IMG/VR virus record: IMGVR_UViG_3300046660_000219
Coordinates: 141,909 to 205,908 of that record
DNA length: 64,000 bases
Strand: one strand, 5' to 3'
Shown here: positions 4,316-36,409 of the stretch, piece by piece
Layout: each line of letters opens with the position of its first letter
Numbering within the stretch: the stretch's first letter is position 1
Program-made: the position numbers and the translations under genes
The notes under the pieces: model-generated
What the model was told of the DNA's origin: nothing
What the model saw: the letters and a program-made list of their open reading frames with translations, nothing else
The model's database searches: none

Positions 4316-4362
4316 CTTGTAAACCCATTAGCTGTCCATGTCAACCCTAGTCGGAAAAATTG
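4316..4362 (-). promoter_or_regulatory. Early sigma70-type promoter (repeat family)
   Basis: TTGACA(4344-4339)-17 bp-TACAAG(4321-4316) with upstream AATTTTTCCGAC. Confidence 0.8.
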
Positions 4363-13481: not shown

Positions 13482-14201
13482 CTAAGCTGCGCGCAACACT
13501 GACGAAGGATATCGCTTCTTCAGTATCGTCCAGGCGGAGAGGTCAGCAATGACCTCGTTCGCTTGAAGCTTGTTGTTCAGGGCGTCCATGGCCAGACAAA
13601 TAGTAGTCTGGCTGGCGATCTGCGCCGTAGCCCCGATCGAAATGGTATTACCGCACGTGCCGATGTCGGCGGACGCTTCGGCGTCGTCGTACAGCATTTC
13701 ATAGTACGCGGCTTGTTCGCTCAAGTCAAACGGCCGGTAGGCGAAGCTCATAGCCGTGCGCCCGCTGGTCCTGGCGTCGTAGCCGACGCGGGTGTCGAAC
13801 ACCCATTCGACCTTGGGGTTAAGCTGACAGCCCTCTTGCGCGATCTGCTTACGGACCGTCATCGTGTCCACGCACATGAACACGAGATTGGCATAGACGC
13901 GCCCACCAAGATACCGTTTCTTGTGGCCAGCGATCTCGGTACCTGTGGCCTCATAAACGCGCTGGCGTAACGCATTCACCTTCAAGCGCTCAATATCATC
14001 AGGGCCATAAGGGTACTGGTTAGACAGGTTATGCGGTTCGACCACGTCGTCATCCCACACCGTGATGTTCTCCAGGCCCAGCTTAGCGAGACCCAGGACG
14101 ATGCTCGACCCAACAGCGCCCGCACCGATCACGAGGATCGACTTGTCGCTGAACTTGTGCGGATCGAATGCACTCAGGTGGCGTATCGTTTCAAGAGCCA
14201 T
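13482..14201 (-). CDS. ThiF/MoeB/E1-like adenylyltransferase
   Basis: ILVIGAGAVGS, WDDDVVEPHNLSNQ, LKVNAL, MCVDTMTVRK; candidate catalytic Cys in IGTCG; no CxxC pairs. Confidence 0.92.
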   Translation of the reverse strand: MALETIRHLSAFDPHKFSDKSILVIGAGAVGSSIVLGLAKLGLENITVWDDDVVEPHNLSNQYPYGPDDIERLKVNALRQRVYEATGTEIAGHKKRYLGGRVYANLVFMCVDTMTVRKQIAQEGCQLNPKVEWVFDTRVGYDARTSGRTAMSFAYRPFDLSEQAAYYEMLYDDAEASADIGTCGNTISIGATAQIASQTTICLAMDALNNKLQANEVIADLSAWTILKKRYPSSVLRAA

Positions 14202-25911: not shown

Positions 25912-26739
25912 TTAGCTCACAGGAGCATCCACAGACGAGGCTGTGGTTTGACTAGCTACATGAGAGTTAGCGTCTTGGGTGGCGACCTGGCTATCCACGT
26001 GCCTATAACGGGCTATGTGGTCAGCTACGCGGGCGCAATAGGTACTGTTTACACGGGAGTTGCCTAGGCCTCGGTTGTACAGCGACACGGCGCGGCACGG
26101 ATTACCTTTAGCCAACCTATAGGCTTTCGCCAGATAGGCAGTCCCGTATTGCAGGTTCACGCTGGCGTCGAGTAGGCGCGATCGTGCGCCAGTAAAGCCA
26201 ACGGAACGGGCAGTGGACTCCTTGATTTGCATGAGACCTAACGCACTGGTTTGTGCGTGAGGGTTAAAGCCACTCTCTGTAGCGATCACGGCATAGATCA
26301 ACTCAGGTGGCAAATTGTGCGACAATGCTAACTGACGAATGGTAGCGTCATGCGCCGATACGAAGGCGAGAGGCGGACCACGTGTCAACGGTTTACCCTT
26401 TACGGGGTTAGCGGTAATGCTCGGATTGTTGATGTTATATGCGTACTGTTTTTCACTGGACTGGCGCTCCGCTGAGTGTACGCGCTTGGTGACAGCGGGC
26501 GCTTGCGTGGGCGTCGTCGTAGCCTCGTTAGTGTAGATCACGACTTCACGCGGTTTAGAAAAGGTAGTAGATGGCATAGTTACCGTGGGCGCGTTGCGCC
26601 ACAGAATGCCGATGAGCCCGCCGTCATGCATGACGTTCAGGGCTTGTAGGAGAAGGAGAGCTAAGGTCGTCGCGATTACGCCGACCAGACCTCGCGGAGC
26701 TTGTAAGGCTTGTGATTGAACATGCACTAGACTTCTCAT
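25912..26739 (-). CDS. Lytic transglycosylase (SLT domain) with N-terminal membrane anchor
   Basis: LIYAVIATESGFNP, ALGLMQI, NLQYGTAYL, YNRG; start position uncertain. Confidence 0.9.
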   Translation of the reverse strand: MRSLVHVQSQALQAPRGLVGVIATTLALLLLQALNVMHDGGLIGILWRNAPTVTMPSTTFSKPREVVIYTNEATTTPTQAPAVTKRVHSAERQSSEKQYAYNINNPSITANPVKGKPLTRGPPLAFVSAHDATIRQLALSHNLPPELIYAVIATESGFNPHAQTSALGLMQIKESTARSVGFTGARSRLLDASVNLQYGTAYLAKAYRLAKGNPCRAVSLYNRGLGNSRVNSTYCARVADHIARYRHVDSQVATQDANSHVASQTTASSVDAPVS

Positions 26740-26752
26740 TCGATTGTTGATC

Positions 26753-26792
26753 CAAAACACTAGCGGTGGCATTGACGCGCACCGCTAGTGTT
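26753..26792 (-). terminator. Intrinsic terminator
   Basis: ACACTAGCGGTG/CACCGCTAGTGT stem followed by TTT. Confidence 0.7.
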
Positions 26793-26986
26793 GGCGGCTA
26801 CAAATAGTAGCAGCACGACGCTTTAATAGTCGTCGATGGGCGGATGGTACGTCATGACGCAGTCCTTCCTTGTTTACGGTTTCAGCAAGTGTCAGAGAAA
26901 CGACAGGACGAGGTTAGTCGTCCTTGACGGGGAGACGGATCATACGAAACCTCCTCTACTGCTACAGAGTGAACTACCCTGTCAAA

Positions 26987-27613
26987 TTAGCGACGCCGCG
27001 CAATGCGCTCTAGCATGCGCGACAGAAAAGCGCGGATACCGCTTTCGCGCTTAGCCCCATACATGGCGTCGTGGTGCTCTACCAGTGACTGCATCATGAC
27101 TTTGTAAGTCTCTGCCGTGGGGTGCACACAGTCCGAACTAAGCGACGTATAAACATCTACTACCTTAACGTCGTTAGCGGCGCTGTACGGATCTACCATT
27201 TGTTCGAATGTCGGTGCAGCCGTGTCCATGTAGTGAATACGTGGCCCACGGCGACCCGGCCGATGTAGACGGCTTTGTGCTTGGAAGTTAAGATCCGGCT
27301 CGAACGTCACTGGCTCCATTTGGAAGTTCGAGATTTTTGAATAGTCTACCTTTACAGGTATGTCACTGTAGAGCTTCCCTTGAATGAGCGCCAACACATC
27401 CTTAGTGGCAGCCGCATTAACCGCTACACGCGCTGTTACAACGTCCAGACGTTGGATATCAAAGTAAGCGTAGGATTTCTTAGCCTTTCTCAACATCTCG
27501 TCGAGACGACACATTGCCTCTTGTCGCTTGGCTAGTGCGAACGTGGATGTGTTAGCCTGCCACAGCAGCAGCTTTACAAGGCTACGCACGCGTTGCGGCG
27601 CTCGCTTGGTCAT
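26987..27613 (-). CDS. Hypothetical protein
   Basis: ATGA-coupled to upstream gene. Confidence 0.7.
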   Translation of the reverse strand: MTKRAPQRVRSLVKLLLWQANTSTFALAKRQEAMCRLDEMLRKAKKSYAYFDIQRLDVVTARVAVNAAATKDVLALIQGKLYSDIPVKVDYSKISNFQMEPVTFEPDLNFQAQSRLHRPGRRGPRIHYMDTAAPTFEQMVDPYSAANDVKVVDVYTSLSSDCVHPTAETYKVMMQSLVEHHDAMYGAKRESGIRAFLSRMLERIARRR

Positions 27614-33861: not shown

Positions 33862-33908
33862 TATGTAAACCCGTTAACCGGCACTGTCAAGCCTAGTAGG
33901 CAATTTTT
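33862..33908 (-). promoter_or_regulatory. Early promoter (repeat family variant)
   Basis: TTGACA(33890-33885)-17-TACATA with upstream A/T tract. Confidence 0.7.
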
Positions 33909-35122: not shown

Positions 35123-36409
35123 CTACGCCACCAGTGACAGACGCGGTTCCAATTTACCGCGTGTCAGGTACTTCTCTTCTAATGCTGACGCACCTAGCGG
35201 TAACAGGGGCACGACATGCTGGTCAAACCACCACTCTTCGCTAGCGTCAGGGAAGTAGGCCTTGTACATGCGTCGCGCTACTGTTTCATCGAGAGCCTTG
35301 ACCTCTTCGATCAAGCCAAAGCGGCCGGGACGCAACAGCGCAGGATCTAGTGTTTCCAGACGGTTTGTCGTAATAGCTAGCATACGACCTTCTCGCGAGG
35401 CAATCCCGTCGAAGGCGTTGAGTACACCACCAAGAGTAAGTTCCCCTTCGCGGCGCTCTTTCTTTTTCTCGTCAAGCAGCCCTTTTGTGGAGACACTACC
35501 CTTACGAGGAAGATCGTCGTCAGCTTTAGCGGCCTTGCGCTTGTGCACGACCTCATGCGTGTCGATGTCCTCAATCACACCAAAACCGTTCGGGCCGATA
35601 CCATTCACCGCCGATTGTAAGCCAGCGTCACCGCCAACCTGAGACAGATTGATGATGTAGATGGATCGGTTGATTGCACCAGCGAACGCCGCAATCAACG
35701 TGCTCTTGCCGGTACCGGGTTGGCCAAAGAAACAGTAGCCACGACGATATGGCGTTCCACGCGATCGGTAGACCTCTTTGCTGACGCAGAACTCCCGCAT
35801 GTCGTTGAGAATACGCGCCTTGGTCTCCTCATCCATGAAAATAGTATCTAGCGAGCGCTTGTACTTGTGATCGATCAATATGTAGCCCTTGCCGTCCCAG
35901 TAATGCACCTTCAGCGTATCCGTGCCTTCATGCAGATCTCGGGCGGCTTGAATCAGGTCGCGAATAGGCTGCTGAGAGCGCCCGATAGTGCGAAGAACGA
36001 TGTCCCCGCGCCGACGTCCTCCGAACAGTGAACCTAGGCCGCCCTCATCTTTAAAAACGCGGTTGATCAGGATGATGCTACCTTTATGCCAGATAACATG
36101 CCAGCCCGTACCGATCGTAACGCTCCACGTCCACTGCATTTGGCTGTAGTCGTAGTTTTCGGTCATCATGAGTTCGCGTGAGTTATTGGCCTTGTTCTCA
36201 CGTGCCAACCACGCGCTCATCATACCGTAAACGTCGTCTTCACTGTGCAGCGTCATGGTCACGGTGAAGAAATACAAGAACGCCGACCAGATTTTGGCGG
36301 GAACAGCCTTGAGGCTGTACGTGACCGTACCGGCGATGGTTGCACCAACCAAGCCCACTAGCATTTGGTTGGTCTGAAATTGGTTAGCTACCCAACTGAA
36401 AAGCGACAT
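35123..36409 (-). CDS. BCS1-like membrane-anchored AAA+ ATPase
   Basis: N-terminal TM, GTPYRRGYCFFGQPGTGKS, IEDID, LNAFDG, TTNRLETLDPALLRPGR. Confidence 0.88.
   Translation of the reverse strand: MSLFSWVANQFQTNQMLVGLVGATIAGTVTYSLKAVPAKIWSAFLYFFTVTMTLHSEDDVYGMMSAWLARENKANNSRELMMTENYDYSQMQWTWSVTIGTGWHVIWHKGSIILINRVFKDEGGLGSLFGGRRRGDIVLRTIGRSQQPIRDLIQAARDLHEGTDTLKVHYWDGKGYILIDHKYKRSLDTIFMDEETKARILNDMREFCVSKEVYRSRGTPYRRGYCFFGQPGTGKSTLIAAFAGAINRSIYIINLSQVGGDAGLQSAVNGIGPNGFGVIEDIDTHEVVHKRKAAKADDDLPRKGSVSTKGLLDEKKKERREGELTLGGVLNAFDGIASREGRMLAITTNRLETLDPALLRPGRFGLIEEVKALDETVARRMYKAYFPDASEEWWFDQHVVPLLPLGASALEEKYLTRGKLEPRLSLVA

What the first reader, a model, noticed from the sequence alone, without database searches (positions are those of the whole stretch)
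26753..26985. Two strong-SD minigenes (MIRLPVKDD, MTYHPPIDDY) in a small terminated unit
GAGGAGG precedes ORF 26943-26914 and AAGGAAGG precedes ORF 26855-26823. Both contain GACGACTA (Asp-Asp near the stop), both stop codons lie in hairpin loops (AGGACGA/TCGTCCT; CGACG/CGTCG), and an intrinsic terminator follows. A TTGACA is at 26985-26980 but the -10 is poor. Inference: functional micropeptides (Pro plus acidic end, possibly inhibitors or degron mimics) or ribosome/peptidyl-tRNA-sequestering minigenes like lambda bar.
Basis: partly seen in the sequence, partly recalled or inferred. Interest (0 to 1): 0.6.

Follow-up and report, generated by a model that had tools for sequence, protein, structure and literature searches.

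The report
Conserved minigene-terminator cassette before transglycosylase gene
In an uncultured 206-kb soil phage, a gap between two genes holds one or two tiny, very strongly ribosome-loaded reading frames and then a strong transcription stop signal right in front of a cell-wall-cutting enzyme gene, and because a second phage keeps the same cassette it is probably a translated control switch rather than chance.

Summary
It exceeds chance: dinucleotide shuffles of the region give two or more SD-led minigenes with P = 0.0004. The first SD ties for the best anti-SD match in the whole 206-kb genome.

The decisive evidence is a relative, L010, whose SLT protein is about 60-64% identical. It has the same cassette in front of its SLT gene: AAGGAGG-N7-ATG, MRLPIKDD, stop, hairpins, terminator.
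- Against focal MIRLPVKDD, the differences are an in-frame codon indel, two synonymous changes, V/I, and TAA/TGA.
- The SD+ORF block is 33/40 identical, against 55% at neutral sites (P = 2.5e-4).
- The terminator stem keeps all 13 pairs through four compensatory double changes.

The genes upstream of the cassette are unrelated in the two phages, so the cassette travels with SLT. The terminator ends 16-28 nt before the SLT start, which leaves no room for a promoter.

Best reading (about 0.45): a translated leader minigene plus an attenuating terminator that gates a potentially toxic transglycosylase. The closest known architecture is mccA-mccB. A trans-acting micropeptide stays open (about 0.2), and a bar-like role is unlikely. 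Minigene 2 (MTYHPPIDDY) is a focal-only paralog.

The parts
26981..26991 (-). It marks the 5' boundary of the conserved cassette.
   Evidence: The identical 11-mer lies at L010 568-578, and GCTAATTTGAT lies in an L005 intergenic region. It occurs only once in the focal genome. The -10 is poor and its spacing to the SD is not conserved.
26964..26982 (-). Small hairpin ACAGGGT/ACTCTGT directly after the motif.
   Evidence: Present in the fold. L010 and L005 also have a hairpin at or just after the motif, but of different sequence.
26950..26956 (-). Shine-Dalgarno GAGGAGG of minigene 1, 6 nt before the ATG.
   Evidence: -12.6 kcal/mol against a generic anti-SD, tied for strongest in the genome. 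The ortholog has AAGGAGG at -12.0 kcal/mol.
26914..26943 (-). Minigene 1: ATG ATC CGT CTC CCC GTC AAG GAC GAC TAA = MIRLPVKDD*.
   Evidence: Ortholog in L010 at 638-664, MRLPIKDD*. The changes are an in-frame indel, 2 synonymous substitutions, 1 conservative substitution and a stop-to-stop change. The SD+ORF block is 33/40 identical against a 55% neutral level, P = 2.5e-4.
26905..26924 (-). Hairpin AGGACGA-CTAACC-TCGTCCT with the stop codon of minigene 1 in its loop, followed by GTCGTTTCTC (weakly terminator-like).
   Evidence: (I13).
26864..26871 (-). Shine-Dalgarno-like AAGGAAGG of minigene 2. It is predicted to pair with CCATCC inside the ORF.
   Evidence: -7.5 kcal/mol with 7-8 nt spacing. 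Local fold.
26823..26855 (-). Minigene 2: ATG ACG TAC CAT CCG CCC ATC GAC GAC TAT TAA = MTYHPPIDDY*. It is a focal-only paralog. Its 3' end and downstream flank align with the end of the single L010 minigene.
   Evidence: It shares P-I-D-D and GACGACT with the L010 ORF. No ortholog was found.
26816..26835 (-). Hairpin CGACG-ACTATTAAAG-CGTCG with the stop codon of minigene 2 in its loop.
   Evidence: The L010 counterpart is AGACG...CGTCT, where the outer pair changes from C-G to A-U.
26794..26814 (-). Hairpin GC-T-GCTAC TATTT GTAGC-C-GC.
   Evidence: The GCTAC/GTAGC stem is identical in L010 and L006, while the loop differs.
26752..26792 (-). Intrinsic terminator: 13-bp stem AACACTAGCGGTG/CACCGCTAGTGTT with an 11-nt loop, then TTTTGG.
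   Evidence: dG -24.8, among the strongest of about 30 canonical terminators. Against L010 (GAACCTAGTGGCG/CGTCGCTAGGTTC) there are 4 compensatory double changes, 2 single changes that keep a wobble pair, and 0 broken pairs.
26744..26756 (-). Conserved TTTGGATCAACAA linking the terminator to the SLT start region.
   Evidence: 13/13 identical in L010 and L006.
25912..26739 (-). SLT-domain lytic transglycosylase with an N-terminal membrane segment. The start is ATG 26739 or GTG 26727. It is followed by its own strong terminator at about 25830-25801.
   Evidence: Pfam PF01464, 5e-19. The membrane segment RGLVGVIA.TL is conserved in P0004/P0030, and the start region is conserved with L005 and L010. 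Terminator.

Best explanation
The 250-nt gap is a conserved cassette that sits in the 5' leader of the SLT transglycosylase gene. It has a very efficiently ribosome-loaded 8-10-codon leader ORF of the family M(I)RLP(V/I)KDD. The focal phage has a second, diverged copy, MTYHPPIDDY. The last Asp-Asp codons of each ORF form the 5' arm of a hairpin that holds the stop codon. Two more hairpins follow, and the last is a strong intrinsic terminator that ends 16-28 nt before the SLT start codon.

All transcription reaching SLT must cross the minigene and the terminator. Most transcripts would therefore end there, as a short, hairpin-protected, ribosome-bound minigene RNA, and only read-through would express the potentially toxic cell-wall enzyme.

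I infer that translation of the leader sets how much read-through or SLT expression occurs. That would be a leader-ORF attenuator, architecturally like mccA-mccB. Ribosome behaviour on the Pro and tandem-Asp codons and at the structured stop codon may be what is read out.

Shown: the anatomy; conservation of the SD, ORF, hairpins and terminator; linkage to SLT; absence of promoter space.

Inferred: that the ORF is translated; that translation changes termination or SLT output; and in which direction.
For: Anatomy and coordinates:
- Read directly.
- Shuffle statistics. SD strength.

Ortholog:
- L010 has the same order of parts.
- Its substitution pattern is coding-like. The SD+ORF block is 33/40 identical against 55% at 4-fold sites of the adjacent SLT gene.
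- The terminator shows 4 compensatory pair changes.

Linkage to SLT:
- The upstream genes are unrelated in the two phages: the 208-aa gene is an orphan, and the L010 132-aa protein has no kin in the focal genome or the database.
- The SLT start is fixed by homology 16-28 nt after the terminator, and SLT has almost no SD of its own (-3.1).
- In more distant relatives without the cassette, SLT directly abuts the preceding gene, so SLT is always fed by upstream transcription.

A second unit of the same design:
- A conserved class promoter is followed by AGGAGG-ATG, MYPPE, a stop codon inside a hairpin, a long terminator-like hairpin, and then a gene. This unit lies in a defined 5' leader at 46623-46414.

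Precedent:
- In mccA-mccB, a 7-codon ORF with a strong SD is followed by two hairpins, the second an intrinsic terminator, before mccB. Ribosome binding controls termination there (PMC4231749).

Prior (established knowledge):
- Known functional bacterial ORFs of 10 codons or fewer are nearly all cis-acting leaders.
Against: - No RNA or ribosome data exist. Only DNA contigs of the source sample were found.
- Only two lineages carry the cassette, so coding-versus-RNA selection rests on four substitutions and one indel.
- No antiterminator was found. Complementarity between the SD/ORF region and the terminator is not above shuffles, and the weak alternative pairings seen differ between the two phages.
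- The local folds around the minigenes are not significantly stable (z = -0.9 and -1.6).
- A tandem second copy and conservation of the peptide sequence fit a trans-acting product at least as well.
- The transcription start of the unit is unknown.
- Terminators followed closely by genes are fairly common in this genome, so the terminator may simply be leaky punctuation.
Confidence: 0.45

Rival explanations
1. Trans-acting micropeptide gene(s). The 8-10-residue peptides (Pro core, acidic end) are the functional product. They would be made in large amounts from a short, terminator-stabilised message and act on a host or phage target, possibly related to SLT or the cell envelope. The terminator would set a high-peptide, low-SLT ratio.
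For: - The peptide sequence, not just the ORF, is conserved (MIRLPVKDD against MRLPIKDD) with synonymous changes.
- The SD ties for the strongest anti-SD match in the genome.
- The focal phage has a tandem second copy, which would raise dosage.
- The cassette is co-inherited with SLT.
- The mccA precedent shows an abundant short peptide message before a terminator (PMC4231749).
Against: - Directly encoded, unprocessed peptides under 10 residues that act in trans are almost unknown. MccA itself needs a dedicated modifying enzyme.
- No export signal, no partner enzyme next door and no recognisable motif were found.
- The second copy differs in most residues.
- Peptide-level conservation is equally expected for a regulatory nascent peptide.
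- Not testable by the complex-prediction tool, because the chains are under 30 residues.
Confidence: 0.2
2. Structured non-coding RNA or a mere 3' UTR. The SD-like purine tracts and ATGs would be parts of RNA helices or incidental, the region would not be translated, and selection would act on hairpins that end and stabilise the upstream message and punctuate transcription before SLT.
For: - In all three copies the SD is predicted to pair with a CUCC/AUCC tract inside the ORF, and the AUG sits in a small hairpin.
- Several substitutions are also compensatory for hairpins (AAG to AAA, and the outer pair of the stop-loop hairpin).
- The 3' half folds far better than shuffles (z = -6.2).
Against: - The upstream genes are unrelated in the two phages, so it is not their UTR.
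- No Rfam family and no tRNA were found.
- A near-perfect SD at ideal spacing to an ATG is kept in both phages, while the sequence 5' of it has diverged beyond alignment and carries a 22-nt indel.
- The indel inside the ORF is in frame, and one stop codon is replaced by another.
- Folds around the minigenes are not significant.
Confidence: 0.15
3. A bar-like, or ribosome-destabilising, minigene that aborts translation and sequesters peptidyl-tRNA or ribosomes. It would damp host translation or act as a sensor, as in lambda bar or the DE/P-rich MgtL leader.
For: - Very strong SD on a very short ORF.
- Pro plus acidic residues lie within the first 10 codons in all minigenes, including MYPPE.
- N-terminal DE/P-rich sequences abort translation and release peptidyl-tRNA (bioRxiv 10.1101/2021.02.02.429294).
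Against: - Bar minigenes are 2-3 codons (own knowledge), and the drop-off toxicity assayed in PMC2490762 (abstract) used 3-8-codon minigenes. These ORFs are 8-10 codons.
- Only 3-4 of 8-10 residues are D/E/P, well below MgtL's EPDP run.
- tRNA sequestration does not explain the conserved linkage to a terminator and to SLT.
Confidence: 0.07
4. Microcin-C-like or other RiPP precursor peptide(s), modified by a phage enzyme.
For: - The architecture matches mccA: strong SD, tiny ORF, two hairpins, terminator, downstream gene (PMC4231749).
- The genome encodes a ThiF-family E1-like protein.
Against: - The peptides end in Asp or Tyr, not the Asn that MccB chemistry requires.
- The gene downstream is an SLT transglycosylase, not MccB.
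- The ThiF-like gene is 12.7 kb away, is only 239 aa (too short to hold an extra MccB-type peptide-clamp domain) and best matches generic ThiF/MoeB or Cap2-like models.
- No exporter or immunity genes are evident.
Confidence: 0.03
5. Chance ORFs in a decaying or duplicated intergenic spacer.
For: - Minigene 2 has no ortholog.
- Stop-in-loop hairpins arise in 12-28% of shuffles.
Against: - Shuffle P = 4e-4 for two minigenes.
- The ortholog is conserved well above the neutral level, P = 2.5e-4.
- The terminator shows covariation.
Confidence: 0.03

Closest known systems
mccA-mccB leader of the microcin C operon (ribosome-controlled intrinsic terminator; Zukher et al. 2014, PMC4231749)
   Same: - A tiny ORF (7 codons, against 8-10 here) with a near-consensus SD.
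- A 3' untranslated stretch with one hairpin just past the ribosome and a second that is an intrinsic terminator.
- The next gene starts shortly after the terminator and depends on read-through.
   Different: - The peptide does not end in Asn.
- The downstream gene is a lytic transglycosylase, not the MccB adenylyltransferase.
- No above-chance complementarity between the ORF region and the terminator.
- It is phage-borne, and the focal phage has two ORFs in tandem.
- Ribosome dependence is untested.
Classical leader-peptide transcription attenuators (trpL, pheL, hisL type)
   Same: - An SD-led short leader ORF.
- Tandem identical codons (GAC GAC) kept in all three copies.
- Hairpins, then an intrinsic terminator, then the structural gene within about 30 nt.
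   Different: - No mutually exclusive antiterminator helix could be identified.
- The stop codon lies about 30 nt before the terminator stem, so a terminating ribosome would not touch it.
- The regulated gene is not biosynthetic.
- The host is unknown.
Lambda bar minigenes
   Same: Phage-encoded, strongly SD-led mini-ORFs outside annotated genes.
   Different: - Bar ORFs are two sense codons (AUG AUA stop), and their effect is drop-off of a very short peptidyl-tRNA. These ORFs have 8-10 codons with a conserved peptide and a linked terminator and gene.
- No toxicity data exist.
MgtL-type DE/P-rich leaders (intrinsic ribosome destabilisation; Chadani et al., bioRxiv 10.1101/2021.02.02.429294)
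   Same: A short leader ORF with Pro and acidic residues in the first 10 codons, upstream of a regulated gene.
   Different: - Much lower D/E/P density.
- mgtA control is Rho-dependent and senses Mg2+. Here the terminator is intrinsic.
- Untested.
Cis-acting minigene mg2 of the axe-txe operon (PMC8708949)
   Same: A translated mini-ORF in the leader of a toxic gene that acts only in cis on that gene's expression.
   Different: - mg2 has two codons and acts positively, probably through mRNA protection.
- mg2 has no terminator between the minigene and the gene.

Membership tests
Intrinsic (Rho-independent) terminator | GC-rich stem-loop followed by a U-rich tract | tested here: met
   13-bp perfect stem, dG -24.8, followed by UUUUGG. 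The U tract is short and interrupted, so termination may be partial.
Intrinsic (Rho-independent) terminator | Structure conserved through compensatory change | tested here: met
   Focal against L010/L006: 4 double compensatory changes, 2 single changes that keep a wobble pair, 0 broken pairs.
Translated small ORF | SD at functional spacing, start codon, frame and stop conserved in an ortholog, with coding-type substitutions | tested here: met
   Minigene 1 against L010 638-664: SD -12.6 and -12.0 kcal/mol, spacing 6 and 7 nt, a 3-nt indel, 2 synonymous and 1 conservative change, TAA/TGA. There are only two lineages. Minigene 2 has no ortholog.
Translated small ORF | Ribosome occupancy or detected peptide | not testable with these tools
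   No RNA run holds the sequence. Only two DNA metagenome runs were found.
Leader-peptide attenuator | Leader ORF and terminator lie in the 5' leader of the regulated gene, with no promoter in between | tested here: met
   The terminator ends at 26756. The SLT start is at 26739 or 26727, fixed by homology. The cassette is linked to SLT in two phages that have unrelated upstream genes.
Leader-peptide attenuator | Alternative antiterminator pairing that competes with the terminator and depends on ribosome position | tested here: inconclusive
   Prefix folds show only weak pairings that are not conserved. Duplex energies between the ORF region and the terminator are not above shuffles (fractions 0.25, 0.11 and 0.78).
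Microcin C (MccA/MccB) system | Precursor peptide ends in Asn | tested here: not met
   The peptides end in Asp (MIRLPVKDD, MRLPIKDD) or Tyr (MTYHPPIDDY).
Microcin C (MccA/MccB) system | Adjacent MccB-type adenylyltransferase with an N-terminal peptide clamp | tested here: not met
   The downstream gene is SLT. The only ThiF-family gene is 12.7 kb away, is 239 aa, and matches generic ThiF/Cap2-like models.
Lambda bar minigenes | Two-to-three-codon ORF whose peptidyl-tRNA drops off | tested here: not met
   The ORFs are 8, 9 and 10 codons. Drop-off and Pth dependence are not testable here.
Sigma-70-type promoter at TTGACA | -35 and -10 hexamers at 16-18 nt, with conserved geometry | tested here: not met
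   No site passes the scan. The best -10 is TAGCAG after a 15-nt spacer. In L010 the TTGAC-to-SD distance is 22 nt longer. The site lacks the upstream element and the TACAAGGGTG -10 of the genome's own promoter class.
Any Rfam RNA family or tRNA | Covariance-model match | tested here: not met
   No hit at gathering score in the window. In the region, only E of about 5 to snoRNA models.

The most novel reading that the evidence does not exclude
The phage uses a family of directly encoded Pro-plus-acidic mini-peptides (M(I)RLP(V/I)KDD, MTYHPPIDDY, and perhaps MYPPE at a second locus) as nascent-chain sensors of the host's translation state. The signal could be EF-P or Pro/Asp-tRNA supply, ribosome stability, or Mg2+. 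Each mini-ORF would be coupled to a terminator, so that envelope-active genes (the SLT transglycosylase, small membrane proteins) switch on only when host translation capacity changes during infection. This would be a phage-encoded translational timer for cell-wall attack. An even bolder variant treats the free peptide, released at lysis, as a phage-to-phage signal.
Probability: 0.12. Interest if true: 0.85.

Novelty: new variant of a known kind. Interest (0 to 1): 0.58.

Why it matters
Leader-ORF attenuators and mccA-type ribosome-controlled terminators are bacterial and plasmid devices. To my knowledge, and after a single full-text search that found nothing, none has been described in front of a phage cell-wall hydrolase. 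A conserved example in a jumbo phage would show that phages use host ribosome occupancy to meter a dangerous enzyme.

It would also add 8-10-codon ORFs to the list of selected phage genes that annotation pipelines never call: neither the JGI nor the Logan gene calls list anything here.

The cassette is small and self-contained, about 230 nt plus a reporter. The hypothesis is therefore directly testable in a surrogate host even though the phage itself is uncultured.

Tried and rejected
**Searches for relatives**
- No DNA match in the 50,697 GenBank phage records.
- No close kin in IMG/VR, using three proteins, an alignment and two DNA patterns.
- The single JGI metagenome scan gave two chance hits. 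The GTDB genome scan gave none.
- The upstream 208-aa gene is an orphan, both by word search and by full phmmer over 1.8 billion representatives.
- The L010 upstream protein is also an orphan.
- Run search: two rhizosphere DNA runs only. One is the likely source. The other holds a few identical 151-nt contigs outside the cassette, so it gives no variants and no RNA.

**Readings considered and rejected**
- Stop-codon read-through fusing minigene 1 to SLT. They share a frame in the focal phage, but in L010 the ORF and SLT are in different frames (638 against 761).
- A longer ORF on either strand. The focal 72-aa plus-strand ORF and the L010 38-aa TTG ORF are not conserved.
- An alternative genetic code. 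Nothing in the genome calls for one.
- A mobile element or MITE. There are no terminal inverted repeats and only a single copy.
- Paralogy of the focal unit with the MYPPE unit. Their DNA similarity is not above shuffles.
- An mccA-type antiterminator. Not supported.
- Translational hopping between the two GACGACTA repeats. It was considered only because the stop codon sits in a hairpin, and it was dropped because L010 has a single copy.

**Not run**
- Complex prediction of peptide with SLT was not run, because the tool needs chains of at least 30 residues.

Full report
**1. Setting**

The window is the last 64 kb of a 205,908-bp IMG/VR virus record with direct terminal repeats. It is a jumbo phage assembled from a rhizosphere metagenome. 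The whole region is transcribed on the minus strand.

Its proteins are mostly orphans. A BCS1-like AAA ATPase is about 35% identical to proteins of Caulobacter and Brevundimonas jumbo phages. No tRNA and no Rfam family lies in the window.

**2.

Reading the minus strand gives the following order of parts:
- The stop codon of a 208-aa orphan gene (TAA 26989-26987).
- TTGACA at 26985-26980.
- A small hairpin.
- GAGGAGG at 26956-26950, then 6 nt, then ATG 26943. This ORF encodes MIRLPVKDD and ends in TAA, which sits in the loop of AGGACGA/TCGTCCT.
- AAGGAAGG at 26871-26864, then 8 nt, then ATG 26855. This ORF encodes MTYHPPIDDY and ends in TAA, which sits in the loop of CGACG/CGTCG.
- The hairpin GCTAC/GTAGC.
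- A perfect 13-bp terminator stem at 26792-26756, followed by TTTTGG.

Both ORFs contain GACGACTA.

Three tests show this is more than chance:
- Dinucleotide shuffles of the 247-nt region give two SD-led minigenes in 0.04% of trials, and an SD as strong as the first in 0.02%.
- That SD ties for the best anti-SD match of any 9-mer on either strand of the genome.
- On the sense strands, strong-SD ATGs mostly open real genes. Among about 30 strong terminators, only this one has an intergenic SD-led minigene in front of it.

The stop-in-loop hairpins exist but are weak evidence on their own, since 12-28% of shuffled downstream sequences also give one. Gene callers placed nothing in the gap.

**3. 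What lies downstream**

The next gene is an SLT-domain lytic transglycosylase (PF01464, 5e-19). Homologs fix its start. The membrane segment RGLVGVIA.TL is conserved in P0004/P0030. The start region AACAAyCGAATGAGAAG is shared with L005, and the L010 ATG aligns with the focal GTG 26727.

The SLT gene therefore begins 16-28 nt after the terminator stem. It has no room for a promoter and almost no SD (-3.1 kcal/mol). A second strong terminator follows SLT.

**4. Comparative evidence**

The cluster of the closest SLT homolog contains P0030 on a 1,586-nt contig, L010. L010 has a 204-nt gap in front of SLT with the same parts:
- GCTAATTTGAC.
- AAGGAGG at 624-630, then 7 nt.
- ATG CGT CTC CCT ATC AAA GAC GAC TGA, encoding MRLPIKDD.
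- The hairpin AGACG/CGTCT with the stop codon in its loop.
- The hairpin GCTAC/GTAGC.
- CGCCA.
- The terminator GAACCTAGTGGCG/CGTCGCTAGGTTC.
- TTTGGATCAACAA.
- The SLT start.

Compared with focal minigene 1, the differences are a 3-nt in-frame indel (Ile2), CCC/CCT and AAG/AAA (both synonymous), GTC/ATC (Val/Ile) and TAA/TGA.

The SD+ORF block is 33/40 identical. Four-fold degenerate sites of the adjacent SLT gene are only 55% identical (n = 93), which gives P = 2.5e-4. The sequence between the motif and the SD has diverged and carries a 22-nt indel.

The terminator keeps all 13 pairs through four compensatory double changes and two single changes that keep a wobble pair. The 101 nt of L006 are identical to L010 and may come from the same sample, so I count only two lineages.

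L010 has one minigene. Its 5' half aligns with focal minigene 1, and its 3' end and flank align with focal minigene 2. Either a duplication in the focal lineage or a deletion between the GACGACT repeats in the other lineage explains this.

The genes upstream of the cassette are unrelated in the two phages, so the cassette travels with SLT. More distant SLT relatives (about 51% identical; L004, L005) lack the cassette and have SLT directly behind another gene.

**5. Promoter question**

The genome has a clear promoter class: TCGG-AATTTTTCCGA-N5-TTGACA-N17-TACAAGGGTG, found five times on this strand. The focal TTGACA lacks both the upstream element and that -10. Its best -10 is TAGCAG after a 15-nt spacer, which would put the transcription start inside the SD. 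The distance to the SD is also not conserved in L010.

What is conserved is the 11-mer GCTAATTTGAC, which also occurs as GCTAATTTGAT in an L005 intergenic region. Its role is open. It could be the module boundary, a regulator binding site or a promoter of a type I cannot recognise. The transcription start of the unit is therefore unknown.

**6. A second unit of the same design**

At 46623-46414 on the minus strand, a bona fide class promoter is followed by AGGAGG-N5-ATG TAC CCG CCG GAG TAA, encoding MYPPE. The stop codon again sits in a hairpin built from the last sense codons. A second hairpin follows, then an 11-bp GC-rich hairpin followed by GUUUCC, and then a gene for an 86-aa two-helix membrane protein.

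Here the minigene is unambiguously in a 5' leader. The two units are not similar at the DNA level, so this is recurrence of a design, not a repeat.

**7. Mechanism**

Shown: any RNA polymerase that reaches SLT has crossed a conserved, optimally SD-led mini-ORF and a conserved strong terminator.

Inferred: the ORF is translated. Support comes from the coding-type substitution pattern, the in-frame indel, the stop-for-stop change, and the SD being kept while its 5' flank drifts.

Inferred further: translation matters in cis for how much SLT is made. The closest worked-out case is mccA-mccB. There, a 7-codon ORF with an ATAGGAGG SD is followed by a hairpin and then an intrinsic terminator. Ribosome binding to the ORF switches termination on and stabilises the short RNA (PMC4231749).

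I looked for the matching antiterminator and did not find one. Complementarity between the ORF region and the terminator is within the shuffle range, and the alternative pairings in prefix folds are weak and differ between the phages. The direction and the molecular route of any coupling therefore remain open.

The tandem Asp codons kept in all three copies, and the Pro or Pro-Pro before them, suggest that ribosome pausing or instability on a very short nascent chain could be the signal read out. N-terminal DE/P-rich sequences abort translation (bioRxiv 10.1101/2021.02.02.429294). However, the D/E/P density here is far below that of MgtL.

A trans-acting peptide remains a serious rival, because the peptide sequence is conserved and the focal phage carries two copies. 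A bar-like role is unlikely given the ORF length. An MccA-type precursor fails the Asn and MccB tests, even though the genome has a distant ThiF-like gene.

**8. Verdict**

The finding is real and conserved. The best-supported reading is a leader-minigene plus terminator cassette that gates a lytic transglycosylase, which is a new variant of a known kind of device.

Confidence in the cis-regulatory reading is about 0.45. Confidence that minigene 1 is translated is about 0.75, and about 0.5 for minigene 2.

Noticed in passing
window minus strand, TTGACA at 4344, 24161, 31712, 33890 and 46623: A conserved promoter class with a near-palindromic upstream element: TCGG(A/C)AATTTTTCCGA-N5-TTGACA-N17-TACAAGGGTG (TACATAGG at 33890). 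These are probably host-sigma early promoters with an operator-like site. Four of them lead into genes within 40-65 nt.
   Followed up: partly
window 46623-46414 (-): A second SD-minigene unit behind one of those promoters. It reads AGGAGG-N5-ATG, MYPPE, then TAA in a hairpin loop, a second hairpin, the 11-bp hairpin CCCCTTACGCA/TGCGTAAGGGG followed by TTTCC, and then a cluster of three small membrane-protein genes (46413-45774) with no family match.
   Followed up: partly
window 13482-14201 (-): A 239-aa ThiF-family E1-like protein (PF00899, 8e-19). Its nearest NCBIfam models are ThiF/MoeB and an anti-phage Cap2-like protein. No link to the minigenes is evident.
   Followed up: partly
window 26981-26991 (-); L010 568-578; L005 767-777: The 11-nt motif GCTAATTTGA(C/T) lies in intergenic DNA of three related phage contigs. 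Each time it is within 16 nt after a stop codon and next to a hairpin. It occurs only once in the focal genome, and its function is unknown.
   Followed up: partly
window 26757, 25802, 25407 (-) and about 30 others genome-wide: There are many canonical intrinsic terminators of the form AAGGCGGG...CCCGCCTTTTTTC. Three lie within 1.4 kb and bracket SLT and a 58-aa gene (25641-25465, which has a CCCGGAGGA SD) as single-gene units without recognisable promoters.
   Followed up: partly
window 35123-36409 (-): A BCS1-N plus AAA ATPase (phrog_7485, 5e-88), 31-37% identical to proteins of Brevundimonas and Caulobacter jumbo phages. It is the only clue to the host clade.
   Followed up: no
window 27020-27053 (-): A weak terminator-like hairpin, AAGCGCG...CGCGCTT followed by TTTTCTG, lies inside the last 25 codons of the upstream 208-aa orphan gene.
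   Followed up: no
L003 12555-12627; L004 1565-2041; L005 838-1158: Tad2-like (PF11195) genes, an anti-defence family, lie near the SLT gene in the relatives. A weak hit also lies about 6 kb downstream, in the direction of transcription, in the focal phage.
   Followed up: no
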